This document shows positions 12,901-45,900 of a stretch of DNA of 64,000 bases, in pieces. The stretch covers positions 57,846,001 through 57,910,000 of the forward strand of contig OZ249436.1 in NCBI GenBank assembly GCA_965235115.1. Direction: 5' to 3'. Position 1 is the first letter of the stretch, and each line of letters begins with the position of its first letter. A program made the translations under genes and the position numbers. The stretch is from Laetmonice hystrix (lineage: Eukaryota). The notes beneath the pieces are model-generated. The model did no database searches. It saw only the letters and a program-made list of their open reading frames with translations, and had not been told where the DNA came from.

Positions 12901-15900
12901 TGCAAGGCGATCGAACAAAGCGCGAAATTGTCGGGAATCCAGACGAAAGTAATTGTAACAGTAAACATATAGTGTACTGAAGATTAGCACTATTAGAAAT
13001 GCATGTACTTTAAATTCAGGTAAAGAGTTGTGGCTACTGGTTTAACTGTTTTCTTCCCACTGATCGTTGCAATTTTCTATTGTACATTTGTAAGAATTTT
13101 ACACCCCTACTCGGAAGTATTACATGTCCATATCCTTTCCAAGCCTGAGTGGGAATGACTGTTACTGGTCAGGTGGCTGTTTATAGGGTTTGATTGATAT
13201 TGAAGGTTTAATACAATCATCGAAATGTTACTCTACTGAACTCAAGTTGTTATTTTCCACGATTGCAGCCTTGTGGAGTTGTTTGAAGGAGGCTCGGGTG
13301 GGCTGTCTGTTCTGAGAACCTTCCGACTCCTACGAATCCTGAAACTTGTTCGGTTTATGCCGGCTCTCCGCTACCAATTAGTTGTTATGCTGCGAACCAT
13401 GGACAATGTCGCTACATTTTTCGCCCTCCTCATCCTGTTCATCTTTATATTCAGGTAAGTTTCATTCTCTGCCTTACCCACGTACTACGTATTATATCTG
13501 GATTCCTGGATGGCTTATCTTAATTGTAGCGCAATAATTTTGACCTCATCTCATCTTATTACATTTATTCATGGTACGTTTTAGGCGTTTATGATCCAAG
13601 CTATGCAATAATCATACTGGATACATTTACTTGAATTTTCAATTATTCTGTATCCCATAAAACATGAGGATAAAATGTTTCGGTATTGACATCTAACGGA
13701 GTTTTGATTATTGATATGATGTGACCCTGTCGTATGAATACCATTGTGATTACATTTAGAGATTTTCTGTGAAAGAGTAATATTGTACTGTGTCTAGCCC
13801 TCCTCCGTCGTCATTGTAAAATGTGTGGGCCAGTTATAATACTTATACAACTTAGAAACGTAAATCTGATTGAAACATATCAAGATCATTATCAGATCTC
13901 TTTGAAATAGGCTACACATAGATAAATTATTTTTTGTAAGTGTTAAAATGTGTGTTATTTTCCTTCCAACCCTTATCCAATTACTCCCCAACCATGTTGG
14001 CAGTGATAATACCTTTTTGTGCTATGATTTATTCCTTGCCCTCTCTGCCTTAAACCAACCCATCTTTCTCGTTCTACTCTTTGTAAACTTTCCCATTTAA
14101 TGTATTGTTGCATGCATCTTTCTCTCTCTTGCCTCAGGTCTATTTTTTGTATATTACCATACGTTCTAGAGATTTTAATGTCATAATGAAAAGCGATTTA
14201 TTCAGTTTAAAACCTCTGATGAGTTGAAATTTCATTTTAGGTTTCAAATGTAGGCGAAAATGAGCATTTAATGTTGTAATGGTATCGTTCTGCATTGTTT
14301 CTAATGACATGCCGTCTTTTCTAAGCATCTAGCATTAAACAAAATATTGTCAGCCTAGTGAAGAGCAAAGGTATCGTGTTACAACGCACAACTTCTGACT
14401 CGACAACACCCTATGATTGCTCGATGTCTCTCGGGTGTAGACACGACTGATTTTTGCTATGCTTGTGGTTGCCTCGCACAGCATTCTGGGTATGAACCTG
14501 TTTGGGTGCAAGTTTTGCGAGAAGCTGAAGAACGGACGAGAGAAGTGCGGCCGCAAGAATTTTGACTCCCTACTGTGGGCCATAGTAACTGTGTTTCAGG
14601 TAGTAACACTTGAGGGCGCTGTGCACCCTTCGCATGAGAGTCTGTCATGGCCATGTCACTGTTAGTGTTGCCAGCTCGTTTATATATTCTCTATATTTCA
14701 ACATGTTTTGTGAGCGTAGGTCAAGTATCAGTTTTAGTTGTATAAGTTATCATTGCATCCACGTAACTGTCGTTCTCTGTCTTTCTTTGGTAGCTGTTCG
14801 TTTATGTTGACGCGTAGTTTAGGTTATGACGTTATTTCATTGTCATGAAAGTCCCTTTTTCCAAATCTAGCGAACGTTACTAAGTGAACTGCCATAGTTG
14901 TTGTGCAATACGGCATCTAACAAAGTTCGTGTCTGTGAATTTGTCAAGGCCCGCGAGGTCTCAACAGTATTGCAGTATTGATGGGCAAAACCAGCAATAC
15001 GGAGTTGTATAGAAATGACAGATGAGCATTAATTATGAAAACAGTTTGAAACGGCGACGCTAAAATTTCAGAGTAACATTATGCCCTCTATTCTGCTCAC
15101 CTCCGTTGAGGGGCCCAGATAATGTCTCTCTCACTAGCACCAGTTCCTACGGGCTATATGGACCAGTTCCTACGGGGTTTAGTCGGGGGAGGGGGGGGGG
15201 CTGGGTGGGAAATGGTCTATTTTAGGGGGATTTGCCATCGTCCTAGACAAGCATCCCGTTTTATGATTTCAATCATGGCTTTATTTTTGGATTGTGGACA
15301 TTCTATAAGATTTAGGAACTATTTTTGTAGTCGCTCCATCTTTTCGAGAAGTAGTGAAGACATTTCGAGTGTGAGTGTGTGCCTGCGCGCGTCGGTCTGT
15401 TTACGTACCAGAGATTGAACAATGAGTCACAATTTTAAACACAAGAGCTCATCTTCTGTACATATACAGGGCACCTGTGTAGCTCACCTACCGACACCTA
15501 TCTTACCCTTAGAGACCATGGCACGCTGCCCAATGAGCGGTCCATTGAGGTCTCGGAAATAACTATTTCCCCATCTTACTTCTTAGTACCGACTCGTCTA
15601 CATCAGTGTGTCAAGGTCTTGGGGTATGCTAAATGTTGTCTAACTAACTCCTCAAAGGGTCCTGCTGTTCATACTAAACATCACTCGATAAAGCAAAGTA
15701 AACGTCATGGCTGAAAGAAGTCGCTTCAATCTGAAAGAAACCTCAAGTCTAACAACAGCAATGGCTGAACATCCAAGGAATTGGTGTTAATGTTGAACGG
15801 CAGCAGGATCCACTTCTCCTCTCAAACTTCGTGACCTTCCTACACTTCCTTTCTGTCCACCTTAATGACTCACCTCTGCCCCCGGCCCCCTGCCCCCTGC

Positions 15901-18900
15901 CCCCTGCCCCTGCCCCCTGCCCCCAGCATTTCCCCCAGCATTTCACATCTCACAAGACACAAAGCGAGAACACGGGCGGACGAGAGCTGCGACACATCAG
16001 TGCGCTACCGACGACAACTTAAGTTCTGTCACAGTGTTGTTTTTCGTTTGCATGTGCAGCGTACTTGGCATGCACTTGTTTGGCGGTAAGTTCTCTGAAC
16101 ACCCGGATGGGTCCCCCTGTTCCTGTGACGCAATTCGCAATGGCACGCTCTGCAGGGTCGACAGAAAAAATTTTGACACCCTTCTTTGGTCTCTGATAAC
16201 AGTGTTCCAGGTAAATACTGCTTTGTTGGTTTTGTTTTAATATTCGGGTTATATCAGCAATTACTTTATAATTGAGTGACATTTACAGTGGTCTACACAG
16301 ATGATTATTATGTTAATTGATGGGGGAAAAAGAGAAAGGAAGAACTCTATGAAAAAAGGCCCGGGGACCGATATTGCTAGGGGGTAGAGTGACTGAAGTT
16401 AAATGTATTTCGGATCTATGTTGGCTTTTCCACCAAACATAGAGTTTTATAAGTCTAGTTTTCGACAAGTGGATTATTTGTAGTAAATTATTTTTCCAAG
16501 TGTTGGCGAAATACTTCAAACGACATCAATGGTCACTTGATACTGCATTACTGTATTCTGAAAATAGTGCTGAAAAGACACACAATGTCAAAATGCCTCT
16601 TATTATGACATTCAGGTATAGATATGTATGGAAAATCAAAAATAATTTGGCCTATGGCTAATACATGTTCGAAAATTTTCCAAATTGAAATCTGGTTATA
16701 AGATGGAAGAATACAGTATATGTACTCATTGATGTACTTCAGTATATTATTGTACCTTCCTGTATTTGATGTACATATTGTATCTATCTGTACCATGGCT
16801 AGATTTTACGGCAAGCATTTGCAATAGTCCGCTTCCAACTACCCCGTGTGACATGGTGTTGAGTGCTTTCTTTAATGGTTAATAGTTAAACTTTTTCCCA
16901 TCTGTGGACACTGTATCTTTGTGAACCTTCTACGGTTGTTAAGTATACATTGGCATTTTCTAACAAAAAGGGATTCGCTTCATTATATGACTCTCTTATT
17001 AGCAACGGTGCTTTCAGTGCTAAAGTAAAGTAGAACTGGTTTTTGCTGACCACTGATTTTAATGGAGATAATTCTGGGGGGTTCTGTTAGATATAGTTGG
17101 TCCAAGTGACCGTGTTGTTGGAGTAGAAGCCACCATATAGGACGACTCGGAGACAGCCATAGCGCCAGCCATGATTTGCAAATAAGAGATTTCGTCAAGT
17201 TGTGTCTTGACGTTATGGATTGCTAGAGGCACGACTTCGTTAACAGTGTATGACGGTCCGGAGAGGAAGTCGGCCCTCTATAGTTGTTTAGAATGGGTTG
17301 GGAGACTGGTGCTTACCTGGGGCTTAAGACATTTAGCTCAGGCGAGTTTTCTGGGAGGACGGTCTGGTAAACAAATATCGGCCATTTGAAATCCTTTTAG
17401 GAAATGTGCTAATCTGGTCTGTAAATTCTGCCAAGTAAAAGCAGTCGCAGGTTATGTAAATGGTATCAAATGCCTCTTTCTGCGACATCGATAAAATCGG
17501 ATTTCTTTGCGACTGCTACAACGCCGTAAACGAACTTAAAAAACTCGAGTTGAAGGATTGTCGGCGAGAATTTACTGGCTGGGATGTACATTAAAGATGC
17601 ATGAATTGGTTCACAACGTACTTGTGATGGCATTTCTTAAGATGGATTAGGTTTGTCACTCCAGACTATGATGGCTACACATATGTTATGGATGCTTTTC
17701 CTAAAGGTTCTGTACAATAAAAGTAATGAATAAATAACTATGAATGAATAGAGTCAAAATGATAGAAGAGCGTGAGTTTAGAAATGGAGAACAACTGAAA
17801 AATAATGGATCTTGGTAGCTCTCGAGAGTGAGTCGTGGCCTGAAATTAGCCCGTGCCGAGAGAAGAGGTCATAGTTTTGCCTTGTGACCTTACAAAACGG
17901 TATGCCGATACACTAAACGTCGTGTAGCAGCCAGAAACATGTGTCAGGTGTGTCATGCAGTGTCGAGTTTGAAACTGTGCAGCGTTAACCTCTGTCAGAG
18001 GAACACTGCCTGTCAGTACCGACAGTCCAGTGTACGCATTCACTATTTCTTCAAGCCGAGCTATACGCCCGTAAATCTAGCACCACGAGGGTCCCCTCCA
18101 CGGTGATATAACCTTATGGGGCCTGGGCTGCTGCAGGTCGTATTATATAACAGTGGGGGCACTTATCGCAGCTATAATATAGGGAGACGACAGGTATGGG
18201 TCTCCGCATGGCCAGTCGTTACGTGTCCTGAATAAGGCACCTGAGGCTTCCCGAGAAATACTCTCACCAAACAAACGCCTAGTTAACATGAAACATAAAT
18301 TTGGCTCCTTGGAGTCGTTCAAAAACCGTCCAAGTATTGGCGCGTCCGGCAACCTGACCATGCATAATATATATACCAACAGCACAACGTGAAAGAATAA
18401 CATATAGAGGGAGAAAATGCAATTTTGTTTTTATTTTTCATGCCTGACACAGGCTTACCACTGAATGTTGACTGAATTACTCAAAACGTTGTGATAAACC
18501 ATCTTGGTAATTGTCAAATCTGAAGGCTGAGTGACCTTTAACATATCACGATTACTATCGAGATTTATACGATTAAAAATTTGTGATTTACACGTACGTC
18601 ATGGATGTTTATCGTGTTACAGACTATTGTAGGGTTTGTATCTAATTGAGGTTCCTCCATCCCTTTAGATCCTCACCCAAGAGGATTGGAACGAGGTGCT
18701 TTATAATGGAATGCACAAGACCTCTGCATGGGCTGCGCTCTACTTTATCGCCCTAATGACATTCGGAAACTATGTTCTCTTCAACCTACTCGTCGCCATC
18801 CTTGTTGAAGGCTTTTCAACAGAGGTAAGAACCCCATTTTTATAATACTGGGTAGATACAGCCTAGATAATATTATCTGAAGGAAAGGTATTGCCACTAA

Positions 18901-33900: not shown

Positions 33901-36900
33901 CCGACTAATCTGTTGGCGAGACGCTTCCAGCGCCTCTTGCTCTATACTACTCACTACCCTGTTAACACACCATCCCTGGGGTTGTCAGTAATCTCTATAG
34001 TAATGCTATTACTCGGATACGATTCTCTAAATGATAGAATGTTTCAATCCCATTTGTGATTTGAGGATCTTCACGGCCCACGCCGCTGAAATGTATCCAC
34101 GTGAGCCTTGTTAGGAAACCTGTCAATGGATGGCATACAGTGACGGTGATCACCTGCCTGACGGCAACAAAATGTCTCCGACACCTGTCATTGTATGCCA
34201 CTCCCAGACCCCCCCCCCCCCCCCCCCCCCACCGTCTGCAAACCCGTCAATCTATCCAGCTACTCTCCTCCACTGTCTGCACCCTGTATGTCGGCATGCT
34301 AGTCCTAACGCTCACCCAGGCGTGCTCGTATCAGTGTCTCTCATTTACCTCGTCATCAGTTAAAACGTTACACATTCACACTTGTGTGTACGTGTAGCCC
34401 TAAACTTCGCCGACTGATCATGGGTAAATGAAAGCAGTGATGAAGATGTGTGTGTACCCAATAGTTTTCATTAACACAGTGTCTGTGACTGCCGCATGGG
34501 ACTATGTTTCTGTACAATACAGTGCATGCATGGACATGAACTAAATCTATACAGTGCATGCATGGACATGAACTAAATCTATACAGTGCATGCATGGACA
34601 TGAACTAAATCTATACAGTGCATGCATGGACATGAACTAAATCTATACAGTGCATGCATGGACATGAACTATAGTGTGCATGCATGGACATGAACTGGTG
34701 GTGGTATTAAATTGAAATATGTCCGGTCTTCAATAGCCGTTTCGTTTGAAAAAGGAAAGAACACATTTAACGAGGATTTCATCATAGAAGCTATGATTGT
34801 GCGTGTCCAATGACTAGCTACGGCGAAGTAAAGATATTTTAGTATAGGTTTTAGACGCCCTCCGGTACAAATGTCACGTTTAACCATTTTTCGCCAGCTT
34901 ACTATACAGTATATCAAGTATATCTGTTAGAGGGTCATACAAATTAGGATCTGTTCGATCTATTCGTTCCCCAATGGAGGCAAGGGGCGTGAACGATTAT
35001 TGGTTCATAATGAAAAATACCGATATACCGAGGTCTTATTTAGTTCCCTGTATATATGACAAAACCTAAAATAACTCAATTTGTATACATTTTTAACCCG
35101 ACCTGATGTAGTCTTCTCTACAAACAACGGATTCCCAAATGATCATAATGCATGAACTTACGGAAAGTGTCGAAATTACGGAAAGTGTCGACAGTTGAAA
35201 GGAGTTCGTATAGGTCCCTCTGACAATTTTCATGACTGTCCTTGCCGGCATTCTCCCGGCCAGCAATAGTAATTCGTGTTGCTCTCTCCCTGCTGTACCC
35301 AACGTTAATTCTTTGTCAGTGACATACGTGTATTTATAACATATCGTGTGTTGTGACGACTGAGGTAGCAGCACCTGTAGTGCATTTAGTGACAGTGTGG
35401 TATGCCCCCACCCCACCTTCACCTCCCTAAAGATAATCCCATTGTTGTGTTGTATGGCCCTACTTGTCACCCTATCCAACCTCCCAACCTATGGTTTATA
35501 TTCGTGTGTTATTTATAACCAAGTCTCCACCCAGCCAGACTCAGTACAACATCCCAATGTTCAGGGTGACTCTGCCGGACCAACCAGCCCTGATCACATA
35601 ATGTACCTGTCGTCACCCAACTGTAGATATTAATATTTTTATCTTTTCATTCTCTTTTCGGGCACAACTTATTTAACAAATATAAGAAGTACAAAGACGA
35701 CAGAAAATTGTCAGTCTTATGGGAACCCATTTTGCATTTGTAGCTGGTCAGAATTGTAGGCTCGATATGTGTGTGAACTCTACTGTACGATTGGCTATTA
35801 CTTTGTAACGTCGGAACCAAAAAACAGGTGTAGGTCCACCTCAAATCTCTGTCACCCAGCAAGTAAATGACAAGGACAAGTTCCAAAGTGGGTTCCCCTT
35901 ATATTATCTACTGTTGTATAACTTGTACATGTATTGATAATAGTGCGAGTAATTCTTTCCATCAAACGGCCAAAATCGATCCACAATCGGAATTCCAGTA
36001 GAAGGTAATATTTGAACGAATGGCTCCTCTGGGTTGAAAAGCTCTCACACATGGGCCGCTGCCGTATCTGGTCAGGGAAGTCATACTAAAGCAAAATCAC
36101 AACATGTGTTATCTTCTCAGGTCCATGAGCAAGCATCTGGATAAATACTACTCTGAAGCAGTGTTTTTTTTTAAAGAAAAAGTTAATTAAGGTTCACATC
36201 ATGACCCAGACACCCAGTTATACCGAACTGATAAACCCGTACCGTACTTGCACCATGAGATTACCTTTTTCTATGTCCAGGAGTTCCTTGTTCGCCTTTT
36301 GTCTTATTATCAAAACCCGATTCTCATAATTCACCATCCAGATCATAGATGAGTTATTAAAAACTGAAGGTTCTTTTCTACCTCAAACCACTTCTATAAA
36401 ATAGGTGCCCAGTTGTATGTACCTACCTGTATGTATAATATAGTATACTATATGCTGACTCTCCACACCACCAAGACCTATAGAAATGAATGTAATCCAC
36501 AACTTCCCGGCCCCTCTCTACTGAATCGGGGGATTATGTTGCATGAACAGACCTAAATTTCTAGAAAGGAAATGTGTTGGGGCTTCTAGCTAAATTAGCA
36601 TTAGGCCTACATTGATTAGTAAAAAGTAACTCGTAGTTGCTATATAAGACTATATGTAACTAACATAAGAGAACATGTAAATTTATCCTAAATGACGTTC
36701 TGAATGAAATGACCGTAGAAGTATTACATATTGAAGACGATAAGTAATGAGTAAACAGTAGAAGACAGATATTTAACATTGGATGTTAAAGCTGCACAGC
36801 ATAACTAAAAAAACACGCCTACTTGTATACTTCAGTTCTACAAAGTAGAAGTATAGTACTTCGATAGTACTAATAATTTAGTCAGTGTTCTAAATCACGT

Positions 36901-42900: not shown

Positions 42901-45900
42901 CATGGAAGCACCGCTTTCACAAGCAGAGGGAACGTGCTAATGAGTGGCTGTACTTGTGATTGTAATCTAAGGTATTTTTTATAGATTGTGGAACAGCTAT
43001 GATATCGAACCATTATTGGCGAACAAAGATGCACCGTTACCTGATACCGGTATAAAGACTTGTTATTAAGATAGAGAAAACAGCCGTGAAGTGGGATTAT
43101 TTGAAGATTAGAAAAGTTAATGAGATAATAGCAATCGGTACCTAATCGTACCTTTTTTATAGCAACCTGCGTCTAAAAGAATAGTAGGCCTGGTATTGTA
43201 GCAGTAACATCGATTATGCCAGAAACGATCGTTACTTTAGATGTGGCAATTCGACCTTAGCAGTTCAAAGAACCCAAGGATTTAAAGTATGCATACTCAT
43301 ACTTTGATACGTATAACAATTTAGATAGGGTAGGTGTTAGGGAAGTAGCCTATATATTCACACGTCAGCGTCCGTTAAGCTGACAATTGTTATGGTATGA
43401 GAGTTAAGACACCACGAAACGTTAACATACAGTTCCGTGTAACATTCGACAACAGGTACCGTCGCAGTCAGCCGGTCTTAGACTTCGCTCGTCACAGTAT
43501 ATAGGGGCGAGGGTTCCGTACATGGTATAGATCTGTGTGTACTGATGTCCGCTTTTCTCCACTTGTAGATGGAATCAGCTTGACATAGCTATTGTTATAT
43601 TATCCATCGTTGGCATCGTCCTCGAAGAGATGAAGTCGAACGTAATACCCATTAACCCGACCATCATAAGGGTTATGAGAGTATTGCGTATCGCTCGCGG
43701 TAAGTGGTCTCAGCTTGACCGCTGAGTTTCTACATTGTCATCAAATGTTACTTCCGGTATGGTGGATTTACAAATTCAGATTTCATTGTGGAAAGGAAGG
43801 CGCGGTTTTAAGGTCATGTTCGTAGTTGAGTTTACTCTTGTGAATTAAATTTTCTTAATAGATTTTCTTGTTTCCTTCAGTCCTCAAACTTCTAAAGATG
43901 GCGAAGGGAATCCGAGCCCTTCTGGACACGGTTGTGCAGGCGCTCCCACAGGTTGGAAATCTGGGACTATTATTCTTTCTCCTGTTCTTCATTTTTGCTG
44001 CCCTTGGAGTCGAACTCTTCGGTCGGCTTGGTGAGTAGGCCTATATTCATTTAACCTATCTAGGCGACTATGTCAAAGTTTGATTAGAATTGAAAAAAAA
44101 CTGATTTTATAAAAATGGATAAGTGACAGTACTGTTGACCCCCCCCCCCCCCCCCCCGGTAGGCCTTACGTTCCCTGACTTTTTCTCCCGGCTGTGCTGT
44201 GAAAGTGTCCGGCATTTTATTATTTAAACACCCCCTAGGGCGGAGACAGAGGCCTGTTTCACTGTGGCTGAGCTGTCTTTGGGAAAGAAGTCTCTGGAAA
44301 GTTGTTATTTTAGCGACAGTTATTAACAAGTACCTGCAGCCACAACTTGAGTGATGGGGCACGGTGATTTGGGGCCCATTCGTCAATACTTTATTATACG
44401 GGCGGCGGCCAGATGGAGGGGTTAACTCATAGGGAATGTAAGCATATATTAGCAGTCTGGTTATTCAAAATATATAGTAATAGGCCTAACAACAGTCTGG
44501 TTTAATTTGTTCTCACAGAATGTTCCGAGGAGCATCCTTGCGAGGGCCTGAGCAAACATGCCCACTTCCAGAACTTCGGCATGGCATTCCTGACTTTGTT
44601 CCGAGTCGCCACTGGTGACAACTGGAACGGGATTATGAAGGATACATTACGGGAGGACTGTGACGCGGGTGATAACTGCGTGCGCAACTGTTGCGTCAGC
44701 CCCATCATAGCACCAGTCTTTTTCGTCGTCTTCGTGCTTATGGCACAGTTCGTTCTTGTGAACGTGGTCGTCGCTGTGCTTATGAGGCACTTAGAGGTAC
44801 GCTTTTCTCTGAACGAACCGCGAAATGTTAACATATCGCTCTCATCAACGTAATATGTCAGCCTCATAGATAATAACTGTAAGTTGTAAGTGTAGATATA
44901 GATTTATGTTTACTGTTGCTTTGTGTAAGCCAGAGGTGACTCGTAACGGTTATAATAATGTAATTGATATCTTAAGATAAAGCACCTTTCGGGAGCTGAT
45001 ATTTTTCTCTAAAAACGTTGAACATTGTTTGCGTCATGACATCACGGAAATTGGGGTTGTTTTAGATTTCAGGATGTTTTCATAATCTTGTTCATGTCTC
45101 ATACTTTGTATTTGTAAACTCTTTGTCTTAACATCAAGCACCTTCATAACAATTTTGGAATTTCTTATACACGATATACCACTTACTATCGCACCGACTT
45201 CAAGAAGGCACCTACCTAGTTAATTAGAAGCACCTTTTACATCTCTCTACTTCACTTCACATTTCTTACCTCATATTCATGTCTTGTCATTAACAAACAC
45301 TCACATTTTCCCTTGAACTGTCAAGATTCAAGGCTGACAAATCTTTCCCGGTTAGTTTTCTTCACTTTACATCTGTAACGTTTTTATATTCAGTTCATTC
45401 TCTTTGAAGAGAAATGTTTTCTTTGCCCCGGCGTGGTGTGACGGTCATTGAAGCGTTTGTTTGTGTTCCTTGTCTCGGTTGGTTATTTACTCATTGTTTA
45501 CCCTCCATACAACTCATGTTACCACTAGGAGTCGCACAAATCGATGGATGATGATGCAGAACTTGAAGCTGAAATCCAGCGCGAGATCGAGGAAGAAGCC
45601 CGCGCTAAGATTGAGCAGGAAGCTGCAGCCTTGAGAGAAAAAGAAGACGTAAGTGACCACAACGCACAGTTGAAATACTACACACATGTAATAATAAACA
45701 TGGCGCAGCCTTGACATGGCGCCGCGCACGCACTCCGAGATCACGTGATGCGCTGTGATCACGTGACAGACGTCGAACCTAGTGGTGGCCCCCCTCCGTG
45801 GAGCGCCTAGGTTAGCTAGCACACCCAGCCTTTCCTTTCAGTGAGATGCCGAGGTGTGAAAAGCCTATCCATCAGCATGGGCATGTTTTTTTTTTTTAAA

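What the first reader, a model, noticed from the sequence alone, without database searches (positions are those of the whole stretch)
14482..16210. Mutually exclusive domain II turret exons: a built-in Ca/Na permeability switch
Seen: two paralogous exons (118 and 151 bp, both 3n+1, phase 2-0) lie between IIS5 and the domain II pore exon. Including both gives an immediate stop (CGT ACT TGG CAT GCA CTT GTT TGG CGG TAA), and skipping both shifts the frame, so only one can be used. Known: in Lymnaea LCav3 and other invertebrates, alternative exons 12a (short) and 12b (long) change the turret, and 12a makes the channel much more sodium-permeable. Vertebrate Cav3 genes have a single exon here. Inference: this animal makes two T-type channels with different ion selectivity.
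Basis: partly seen in the sequence, partly recalled or inferred. Interest (0 to 1): 0.72.

Follow-up and report, generated by a model that had tools for sequence, protein, structure and literature searches.

The report
Worm T-type channel alternative turret exons
An annelid-like worm's single T-type calcium channel gene carries the already known pair of either/or "turret" exons. The residue that makes this pair a sodium/calcium switch in snails is the same in both worm exons, and conserved GCAUG signals beside them suggest how the choice is made.

Summary
Exons 14482-14599 (118 nt) and 16060-16210 (151 nt) are paralogues with AG/GT borders, lying between the IIS4-S5 exon and the domain II pore exon of the genome's only Cav3 gene. 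Using both gives a stop after 9 codons, and skipping both shifts the frame.

They are orthologues of exons 12a/12b of Lymnaea LCav3, a system already described from flatworms to annelids, so the kind is known. Both exons are under purifying selection against a deeply diverged relative.

The "Ca/Na switch" inference is only partly supported. In snails and nematodes the switch is Lys (12a, DRKNFD) versus Ala/Met (12b, DRANFD). Here both exons carry Lys. Exon 12b has also lost cysteines 1 and 5 of the usual five.

New here: GCAUG lies +33 nt after the 12a donor, and UGCAUG lies 11 nt before the 12b acceptor. The same layout occurs in five further annelid-like genomes and in Lymnaea. It is absent where 12a or 12b stands alone. 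This fits an Rbfox-type toggle that favours 12a.

No RNA data exist for this species, so use of both exons is inferred.

The parts
13270..13454 (+). Constitutive exon for domain II S4 to S5 (exon 11 equivalent). It ends with 2 bases of a codon and has the consensus donor CAG|GTAAGT.
   Evidence: Translation LVELFEGG...LILFIFIF matches human Cav3.2 residues 638-692 at E 4.9e-25.
14482..14599 (+). Exon 12a: short turret of 39 aa after the shared Ser, [39 protein letters not shown]. It has the CxxC...C tri-cysteine pattern, Lys in RKNFD, and a weak donor CAG|GTAGTA.
   Evidence: It is 82-87% identical to 12a of relatives L008 and L011. pN is 0.08 against L008, with synonymous sites saturated.
14632..14636 (+). 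GCAUG element 33 nt downstream of the 12a donor, in the position where Rbfox binding enhances an exon.
   Evidence: GCATG is the only one of the 1024 5-mers present in the 190 nt after 12a in all six annelid-like loci that have both exons. It is also at +162 in Lymnaea. It is absent within 400 nt in two 12a-only loci.
16049..16054 (+). UGCAUG element inside the 12b 3' splice-site region, with its first base 11 nt before the exon. This is the position where Rbfox binding represses an exon.
   Evidence: GCATG lies at -8 to -37 in 6 of 6 both-exon annelid-like loci and at -8 in Lymnaea. It is found in 0 of 16 distinct 12b-only loci. It is the only 5-mer present in all six 40-nt upstream stretches.
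16060..16210 (+). Exon 12b: long turret of 50 aa after the shared Ser, [50 protein letters not shown]. It keeps Cys2-4 only, has an NGT sequon, Lys in RKNFD, and the donor CAG|GTAAAT.
   Evidence: pN is 0.21, pS 0.61 and dN/dS about 0.19 against L008.
18669..18824 (+). Constitutive domain II pore exon (ILTQEDWN...). It carries the selectivity-filter Glu and the adjacent 'beacon' Asp, and starts in phase 0.

Best explanation
These are the orthologues of exons 12a and 12b of invertebrate Cav3 (T-type) channels, in the only Cav3 gene of an annelid-like worm.

Shown:
- The two paralogous 3n+1 exons encode alternative IIS5-to-pore-helix turrets.
- Only single inclusion keeps the frame.
- Both exons have been kept by purifying selection.

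Inferred:
- Both exons are used, and mRNAs with double inclusion or double skipping are removed by nonsense-mediated decay, as found for the homologous cca-1 18a/18b pair of C. elegans.
- The choice is steered by an Rbfox-type protein. GCAUG 33 nt after the weak 12a donor would enhance 12a. UGCAUG in the 12b acceptor region would block 12b. Rbfox-positive cells (typically muscle and neurons) would then make 12a, and other cells the default 12b.

The two channels differ in three ways:
- Turret length differs by 11 residues.
- The Cys of FGCKF, which in 12a and in human Cav3 is bonded to voltage sensor I, is Gly in 12b.
- 12b alone has an N-x-T sequon.

They do not differ at the Lys/Ala site that sets Na+ versus Ca2+ preference in snails. 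The most likely effect is therefore on gating kinetics and on how tightly the turret is tied to voltage sensor I. A difference in permeation is possible but unproven.
For: - Anatomy and frames.
- Identity of the gene: one search places the tblastn hits on exons from late domain I or the I-II linker through domain IV. The filter residues are E(D)/D/D, and the IV L6 loop has 4 Cys.
- Both exons map to the same human Cav3.2 segment.
- Single locus in the genome.
- Literature on 12a/12b: PMC7382465, PMC9694082 and PMC10120453.
- The Lymnaea exons were read directly from P0002/L084.
- Selection: pN 0.08 (12a) and 0.21 (12b), with pS 0.6-0.9, against L008.
- Same exon order with intact splice sites in L008, L011, L015, L016, L017, in bivalves and in Lymnaea.
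- GCAUG pair. The per-locus chance of having both elements is 0.002-0.0085 by shuffling. The neighbouring intron is unalignable (50-60 matches per 100, against a shuffled mean of 49).
- Control flanks are empty: 0 of 6 upstream of 12a.
- Rbfox position rule and the egl-15 precedent: PMC2777236.
- cca-1 18a/18b (130 and 151 nt, 3n+1) were validated as mutually exclusive and partly NMD dependent: PMC4165533.
- An Rbfox RRM exon (QFGPILDVEIIFNERGSK) is present in this genome.
Against: - No RNA run holds this locus. The three runs that hold it are genomic DNA from one sample. So neither exon's use, nor tissue specificity, nor NMD is shown for this species.
- Rbfox binding is inferred from a 5-6 nt motif only.
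- Two bivalve loci have the element after 12a but none before 12b.
- The relatives are unnamed contigs whose kinship is judged from sequence alone.
- The functional consequences of the turret differences are extrapolated from Lymnaea.
Confidence: 0.8

Rival explanations
1. One reading: the pair is a Ca2+/Na+ permeability switch as in Lymnaea, with 12a giving a sodium-permeable channel and 12b a calcium-selective one.
For: - The exons are orthologous to the Lymnaea pair.
- 12a has the CxxC...C scaffold and the Lys.
- The domain II Glu-Asp pair and a four-cysteine IV L6 loop, both needed for high Na+ permeation in LCav3-12a, are present.
- Turret length and disulfides do differ between the isoforms.
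Against: - The residue that alone converts 12a into 12b behaviour and back in Lymnaea (K1067A, A1078K) is Lys in both worm exons.
- The authors restrict the neutral residue to molluscs and nematodes.
- Removing turret disulfides raised Na+ permeability in both Lymnaea isoforms. A 12b that has lost one cysteine pair and keeps Lys could therefore be sodium-permeable too.
Confidence: 0.35
2. Only one of the two exons is still used. The other is a decaying relic, as expected from the relatives that have lost 12a or 12b.
For: Lineage-specific loss is real. L013 and L014 have 12a only. L001, L006 and many gutless-oligochaete contigs have 12b only.
Against: - Both worm exons have an open frame, AG/GT borders and strong amino-acid conservation, while synonymous sites are saturated.
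- No variant lies in either exon where the sample's contigs cover it.
- The flanking GCAUG elements are kept exactly in the genomes that keep both exons.
Confidence: 0.05
3. The conserved GCAUG elements are not Rbfox sites. They could belong to an extended splice-site or branch-site signal, to another factor's site, or to an RNA structure.
For: - In four loci the upstream element sits in a longer shared string (UUUUUGUUUGCAUG-like), which could serve another protein such as a U- or GU-binding factor.
- No binding data exist.
- An inverted repeat flanks 12b (15929-15948 and 16310-16329).
Against: - GCATG is absent from the acceptor region of 16 distinct constitutive 12b exons, so it is not a general 3' splice-site feature.
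- The same pentamer, and no other, recurs in a second place after 12a.
- The two places match the known Rbfox rule.
- An Rbfox gene is present in this genome.
Confidence: 0.25

Closest known systems
Lymnaea stagnalis LCav3 exons 12a/12b (Senatore, Spafford and colleagues; PMC7382465, PMC9694082)
   Same: - Same place in the gene and same order (12a, then 12b).
- Same phase and 3n+1 lengths.
- 12a has 39 aa and 12b 50 aa in both species.
- 12a has the FGCKFC...C pattern, and 12b has GG in place of GC.
- Same GCAUG layout: +162 after 12a and -8 before 12b in Lymnaea.
   Different: - Lymnaea 12b has Ala at DRANFD and five cysteines.
- The worm 12b has Lys and only three cysteines: Cys1 is Ser and Cys5 is Val.
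- The worm 12a reads CGRKNFD where Lymnaea and most other animals read CDRKNFD.
C. elegans cca-1 exons 18a/18b (PMC4165533)
   Same: - Homologous mutually exclusive pair in the Cav3 gene.
- Both exons are 3n+1, and 18b is also 151 nt.
- About 44% amino-acid identity between the two exons, against 46% here.
- Exclusivity is backed up by NMD.
   Different: - The nematode 12b keeps the GC cysteine and has Met at the Lys site.
- The intervening intron is only 97 nt, against 1460 nt here.
Rbfox-controlled mutually exclusive exons: egl-15 5A/5B in C. elegans and FGFR2 IIIb/IIIc in mammals (PMC2777236)
   Same: UGCAUG sits just upstream of one exon of a mutually exclusive pair, in its branch-point or 3' splice-site region, which represses it and hands the choice to the partner exon. 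A downstream GCAUG sits at the enhanced exon.
   Different: Here the regulation is inferred from conserved motifs only. In egl-15 the repressed exon is the upstream one and SUP-12 cooperates. No GUGUG partner site was looked for here.
Vertebrate CACNA1G/H/I exon encoding the IIS5-P turret
   Same: 12a aligns without a gap to human Cav3.2 residues 694-732. It shares the FGCKF cysteine and [17 protein letters not shown].
   Different: Vertebrates have one exon, one cysteine and no alternative.

Membership tests
Invertebrate Cav3 exon 12a/12b mutually exclusive turret exons | Lies between the IIS5 exon and the domain II pore-helix exon of a Cav3 (T-type) alpha-1 gene | tested here: met
   The flanking exons match Cav3.2 residues 638-692 and the ILTQEDWN pore. 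Cav3 exons run through the window.
Invertebrate Cav3 exon 12a/12b mutually exclusive turret exons | Two homologous exons that can only be used singly | tested here: met
   118 and 151 nt, both 3n+1. Double inclusion gives a stop after 9 codons, and double skipping shifts the frame.
Invertebrate Cav3 exon 12a/12b mutually exclusive turret exons | 12a is short (38-46 aa) with the tri-cysteine pattern CxxC...C | tested here: met
   39 aa, [16 protein letters not shown]. The range comes from PMC7382465.
Invertebrate Cav3 exon 12a/12b mutually exclusive turret exons | 12b is longer (48-55 aa) | tested here: met
   50 aa, with an 11-residue insertion relative to 12a and to human Cav3.2.
Invertebrate Cav3 exon 12a/12b mutually exclusive turret exons | 12b has the penta-cysteine pattern C...CxC...CxC (stated for 'most protostomes') | tested here: not met
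   Only CxC...C remains; Cys1 is Ser and Cys5 is Val. Of 136 distinct 12b turrets, 127 have both cysteines, 5 (all annelid-like) lack both, 4 lack Cys5 only and none lacks Cys1 only. Orthology to 12b still holds by best matches and by position.
Invertebrate Cav3 exon 12a/12b mutually exclusive turret exons | Both isoforms are present in mRNA | not testable with these tools
   No RNA run holds the locus. The three holders are genomic DNA.
Lys/neutral-residue Na+/Ca2+ selectivity switch of mollusc and nematode Cav3 | Lys in 12a (RKNFD) but Ala, Met, Ser or Thr at the same place in 12b | tested here: not met
   The worm has GRKNFD in 12a and DRKNFD in 12b. Lymnaea has DRKNFD and DRANFD. The rule is stated.
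Lys/neutral-residue Na+/Ca2+ selectivity switch of mollusc and nematode Cav3 | Domain II filter Glu followed by the 'beacon' Asp, and a four-cysteine IV L6 loop | tested here: met
   ILTQEDWN at 18669 and [14 protein letters not shown] after GDNWN near 44614.
Lys/neutral-residue Na+/Ca2+ selectivity switch of mollusc and nematode Cav3 | Different PNa/PCa of the two isoforms | not testable with these tools
   This needs electrophysiology.
Rbfox-regulated alternative exons | (U)GCAUG in the upstream flank of the repressed exon and in the downstream flank of the enhanced exon | tested here: met
   UGCAUG at 16049-16054 (-11 of 12b) and GCAUG at 14632-14636 (+33 of 12a).
Rbfox-regulated alternative exons | The elements are conserved where the surrounding intron is not | tested here: met
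   6 of 6 annelid-like both-exon loci plus Lymnaea. GCATG is the only 5-mer of 1024 present in all six, in either flank. The neighbouring intron is at random-level identity. 0 of 16 12b-only loci and 0 of 2 12a-only loci have it.
Rbfox-regulated alternative exons | The organism has an Rbfox protein | tested here: met
   An exon encoding QFGPILDVEIIFNERGSK lies at G000:C1:58066407-58066514(-). The near-exact match validates it.
Rbfox-regulated alternative exons | The splicing ratio depends on Rbfox and on the motifs | not testable with these tools
   This needs a minigene or knock-down.

The most novel reading that the evidence does not exclude
The choice between the two Cav3 turrets is set by an old Rbfox toggle, shared by annelids and a gastropod: GCAUG after 12a and GCAUG in the 12b acceptor. 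In annelids this toggle does not flip the Lys/Ala sodium switch. Instead it changes how the domain II turret is tied to voltage sensor I, and it changes the turret's glycan and disulfide scaffold. This would make the sodium switch of snails and nematodes a later add-on to an older gating switch.
Probability: 0.35. Interest if true: 0.6.

Novelty: new variant of a known kind. Interest (0 to 1): 0.42.

Why it matters
The exon pair itself is textbook for invertebrate T-type channels, so finding it in one more worm adds little. Two points are worth a specialist's time.

First, outside molluscs and nematodes the proven sodium-switch residue is Lys in both exons. Some annelid-like lineages have also dropped one cysteine pair of 12b. 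So the common assumption that 12a means a sodium channel and 12b a calcium channel should not be carried over to annelids, and probably not to arthropods, without recording.

Second, nobody in the searchable literature has said what chooses between 12a and 12b. A GCAUG pair conserved from annelids to Lymnaea gives a simple hypothesis that a minigene can test. It would also explain why 12a is the only isoform in the snail heart.

Tried and rejected
- RNA evidence. The one run search (5.6 kb query, kind rna) returned only three runs of one sample. Laid on the stretch, they are colinear genomic contigs without joints. The long, mostly intronic query may have hidden RNA runs.
- A third exon copy: none in the window or in the genome.
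- Docking/selector RNA pairing as in Dscam. Six short inverted repeats turned up, 73-93% complementary, and I did not test whether any is conserved. One pair flanks 12b. I did not pursue this.
- The Pfam Fox-1_C search of the genome gave nothing, but it also gave nothing in the control genomes, so it is uninformative. I replaced it with an RRM peptide search.
- The supplementary alignment of PMC7382465 is machine-read and unreliable. I read the exons from database proteins instead.
- Structure prediction was not run.
- The Owenia locus was withheld.
- The full-length protein searches returned no protein of this species.
Full report
**1. What is in the sequence**

- An exon ending at 13454 (…LILFIFIF, donor CAG|GTAAGT) leaves two bases, AG, of a codon.
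- Exon 14482-14599 is 118 nt. Exon 16060-16210 is 151 nt.
- Each starts with a C that completes AGC (Ser), and each ends on a full codon (…TVFQ).
- The next exon, at 18669, starts in phase 0 with ILTQEDWN.

Joining e11+12a+e13 or e11+12b+e13 gives an open frame. Joining both exons gives …[12 protein letters not shown]. Skipping both shifts the frame into stops.

The two peptides are 46% identical. They share the ends (LGMxLFG…RKNFDxLLWxxxTVFQ) and differ in the middle. No other copy lies in the window or in the 627-Mb, 35-contig assembly. Genomic contigs from the one public sample that holds the stretch show no variant in either exon where they cover it.

**2. What gene it is**

- The upstream exon matches residues 638-692 of human Cav3.2 (9ayg_A) at E 4.9e-25. 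This is well ahead of Cav1, Cav2 and Nav chains.
- Both alternative exons match the same residues, 694-732: 12a without a gap, and 12b with an 11-residue insertion.
- tblastn with full-length Cav3 proteins places hits on exons from late domain I or the I-II linker through domain IV across the window.
- Filter residues are E(D) in domain II, D (KDGW) in III and D (GDNW) in IV. The IV L6 loop has four cysteines.
- The closest named proteins are Capitella teleta (78% identity over matched exons) and the nemertean Tubulanus polymorphus (highest summed score). I therefore call the animal annelid-like.
I did not test that.

**3. Comparison with what is known**

The system is described in the literature.
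- PMC7382465 states that mutually exclusive exons 12a and 12b occur in most non-vertebrate Cav3 genes. 12a is 38-46 aa with CxxC…C. 12b is 48-55 aa with C…CxC…CxC.
- C. elegans cca-1 18a/18b (130 and 151 nt, both 3n+1) were validated by RT-PCR as mutually exclusive and partly dependent on NMD (PMC4165533).

So the kind is known, and the worm's 12a fits it exactly.

**4. The sodium-switch inference**

In Lymnaea a single residue carries the switch. Changing K1067 of 12a to Ala makes the channel calcium-selective. Changing A1078 of 12b to Lys makes it sodium-permeable.

I read the Lymnaea exons from a database protein and from its genomic locus:
- 12a: …[14 protein letters not shown]…
- 12b: …LCSCDRANFDNLLW…

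The 11-residue offset between positions 1067 and 1078 equals the length difference of the exons. This puts the site at DR[K/A]NFD. Nematode 12b has DRMNFD at the same place.

The worm has GRKNFD in 12a and DRKNFD in 12b, so Lys is in both. All twelve annelid-like 12b exons that I aligned keep this Lys. So do 96 of 136 distinct 12b turrets in my collection; Ala appears in 26 and Met in 10. The authors themselves limit the neutral residue to molluscs and nematodes.

The proven determinant therefore does not distinguish the worm's two isoforms. Human Cav3 channels also have this Lys and are calcium-selective. In Lymnaea, breaking turret disulfides raised sodium permeability in both isoforms. The direction of any permeation difference here cannot be predicted from sequence.

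**5. How the two worm turrets differ**

- 12b is 11 residues longer.
- 12a has the FGCKF cysteine, which in human Cav3 and in mollusc 12a is bonded to the S1-S2 loop of voltage sensor I. 12b has Gly there. Mollusc 12b uses an inner cysteine instead, and its kinetics are faster.
- 12b carries an N-G-T sequon. An N-x-S/T sequon is present at this place in 8 of the 12 aligned annelid-like 12b exons. 12a has none.
- 12b has lost Cys1 (Ser) and Cys5 (Val). Across 136 distinct 12b turrets, 127 have both, five lack both (all annelid-like), four lack Cys5 only, and none lacks Cys1 only. This joint loss suggests that Cys1 and Cys5 form one dispensable disulfide. That is an inference and has not been tested structurally.

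**6. Are both exons alive?**

Compared with relative L008, which has the same exon order and intact AG/GT borders, synonymous sites are saturated (pS 0.6-0.9). Amino-acid change is low:
- pN 0.08 for 12a, the same as for the constitutive exon 11 (0.07);
- pN 0.21 for 12b.

Relatives show every state.
- Both exons: L008, L011, L015, L016, L017, bivalves and Lymnaea.
- 12b only: L001, L006 and many gutless-oligochaete contigs.
- 12a only: L013 and L014.

Loss does happen when one exon becomes dispensable. That makes retention of both here informative.

**7. A regulatory signal not in the finding**

In the window, GCAUG lies 33 nt after the 12a donor (14632-14636). UGCAUG lies in the 12b acceptor region (16049-16054, with the exon starting at 16060).

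The same layout holds in all five other annelid-like loci that have both exons:

| Locus | GCAUG after 12a donor | GCAUG before 12b acceptor |
|---|---|---|
| L008 | +41 | -8 |
| L011 | +184 | -17 |
| L015 | +18 | -20 |
| L016 | +26 | -8 |
| L017 | +74 | -37 |

A scan of all 1024 5-mers, blind to the motif, gave the following:
- GCATG is the only 5-mer present in all six 40-nt stretches before 12b. The next best are in four.
- GCATG is also the only 5-mer present in all six 190-nt stretches after 12a.
- Shuffling each intron gives a per-locus chance of 0.002-0.0085 of having both elements.
- The adjacent 100 nt of intron align at random level: 50-60 matches against a shuffled mean of 49.

Controls are clean.
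- GCATG is in 0 of 6 stretches upstream of 12a, and in 2 of 6 stretches downstream of 12b, which is about chance.
- It is in 0 of 16 distinct 12b-only acceptors. These come from roughly four lineages, so they are not 16 independent cases.
- It is in neither of the two 12a-only loci within 400 nt after the exon.

In Lymnaea, the species in which tissue-specific use was shown, UGCAUG lies +162 after 12a and GCAUG lies at -8 of 12b. The bivalve loci (two distinct sequences; L002 and L024 read alike) have only the element after 12a.

(U)GCAUG is the Rbfox site. Upstream sites repress an exon and downstream sites enhance it. In C. elegans egl-15, an upstream UGCAUG represses one exon of a mutually exclusive pair (PMC2777236).

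Several further points fit this reading:
- The 12a donor is weak here (GTAGTA) and in every relative. The 12b donor (GTAAAT) and its pyrimidine tract are better. 12a therefore looks like the exon that needs help, and 12b like the default.
- The genome holds an Rbfox RRM exon.
- The same gene has an array of twelve UGCAUG at 34523-34686.

No paper in the searchable library links Rbfox to these exons.

**8. Verdict**

- Homology to the known 12a/12b pair is secure.
- The functional label "Ca/Na switch" is not carried by the sequence.
- Use of both exons and the Rbfox toggle are inferences. The first is well supported and the second reasonably supported. Both await RNA and minigene data.

Noticed in passing
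window 34523-34686: Twelve UGCAUG copies in a short tandem array inside the same Cav3 gene, as another first-stage note (s1-353782) said. Together with the 12a/12b elements, this suggests the gene is a multi-site Rbfox target.
   Followed up: partly
L010:1001-6751 (unnamed relative, 514-kb ENA contig): A complete Cav3 protein (P0199, 1916 aa) with a three-cysteine 12b turret is encoded by one uninterrupted 5751-nt open frame. This intronless copy is probably a retrogene made from a 12b-containing mRNA.
   Followed up: no
G000:C1:58066407-58066514 (-), about 156 kb beyond the window's end: An exon encoding QFGPILDVEIIFNERGSK, the core of the Rbfox RNA-recognition motif, lies on the same chromosome as the Cav3 gene.
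   Followed up: partly
L013, L014 (12a only); L001, L006, L019-L064 (12b only): Annelid-like relatives have repeatedly lost one of the two turret exons. Many marine gutless-oligochaete metagenome contigs carry 12b alone, with a short intron in place of 12a.
   Followed up: partly
window 14551-14556 (12a, CGRKNFD): In this worm and the five annelid-like relatives with both exons, the Asp that precedes Arg-Lys in nearly all other 12a exons, and in human Cav3 (DRKNFD), is Gly. It is Trp in the two 12a-only relatives. The effect is unknown.
   Followed up: no
window 15880-15927 and 15185-15200: A CCCCTG-type microsatellite and a G run lie in the 12a-12b intron. Public contigs break or differ there, with a G inserted after 15190. 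A 4-nt insertion (TGAT) after 14413 is polymorphic upstream of 12a.
   Followed up: no
window 15929-15948 and 16310-16329: A 20-nt inverted repeat (85% complementary) brackets exon 12b and could loop it out. I did not test whether it is conserved.
   Followed up: no
If that is real, this channel has two independent alternative pore-region modules.
   Followed up: no
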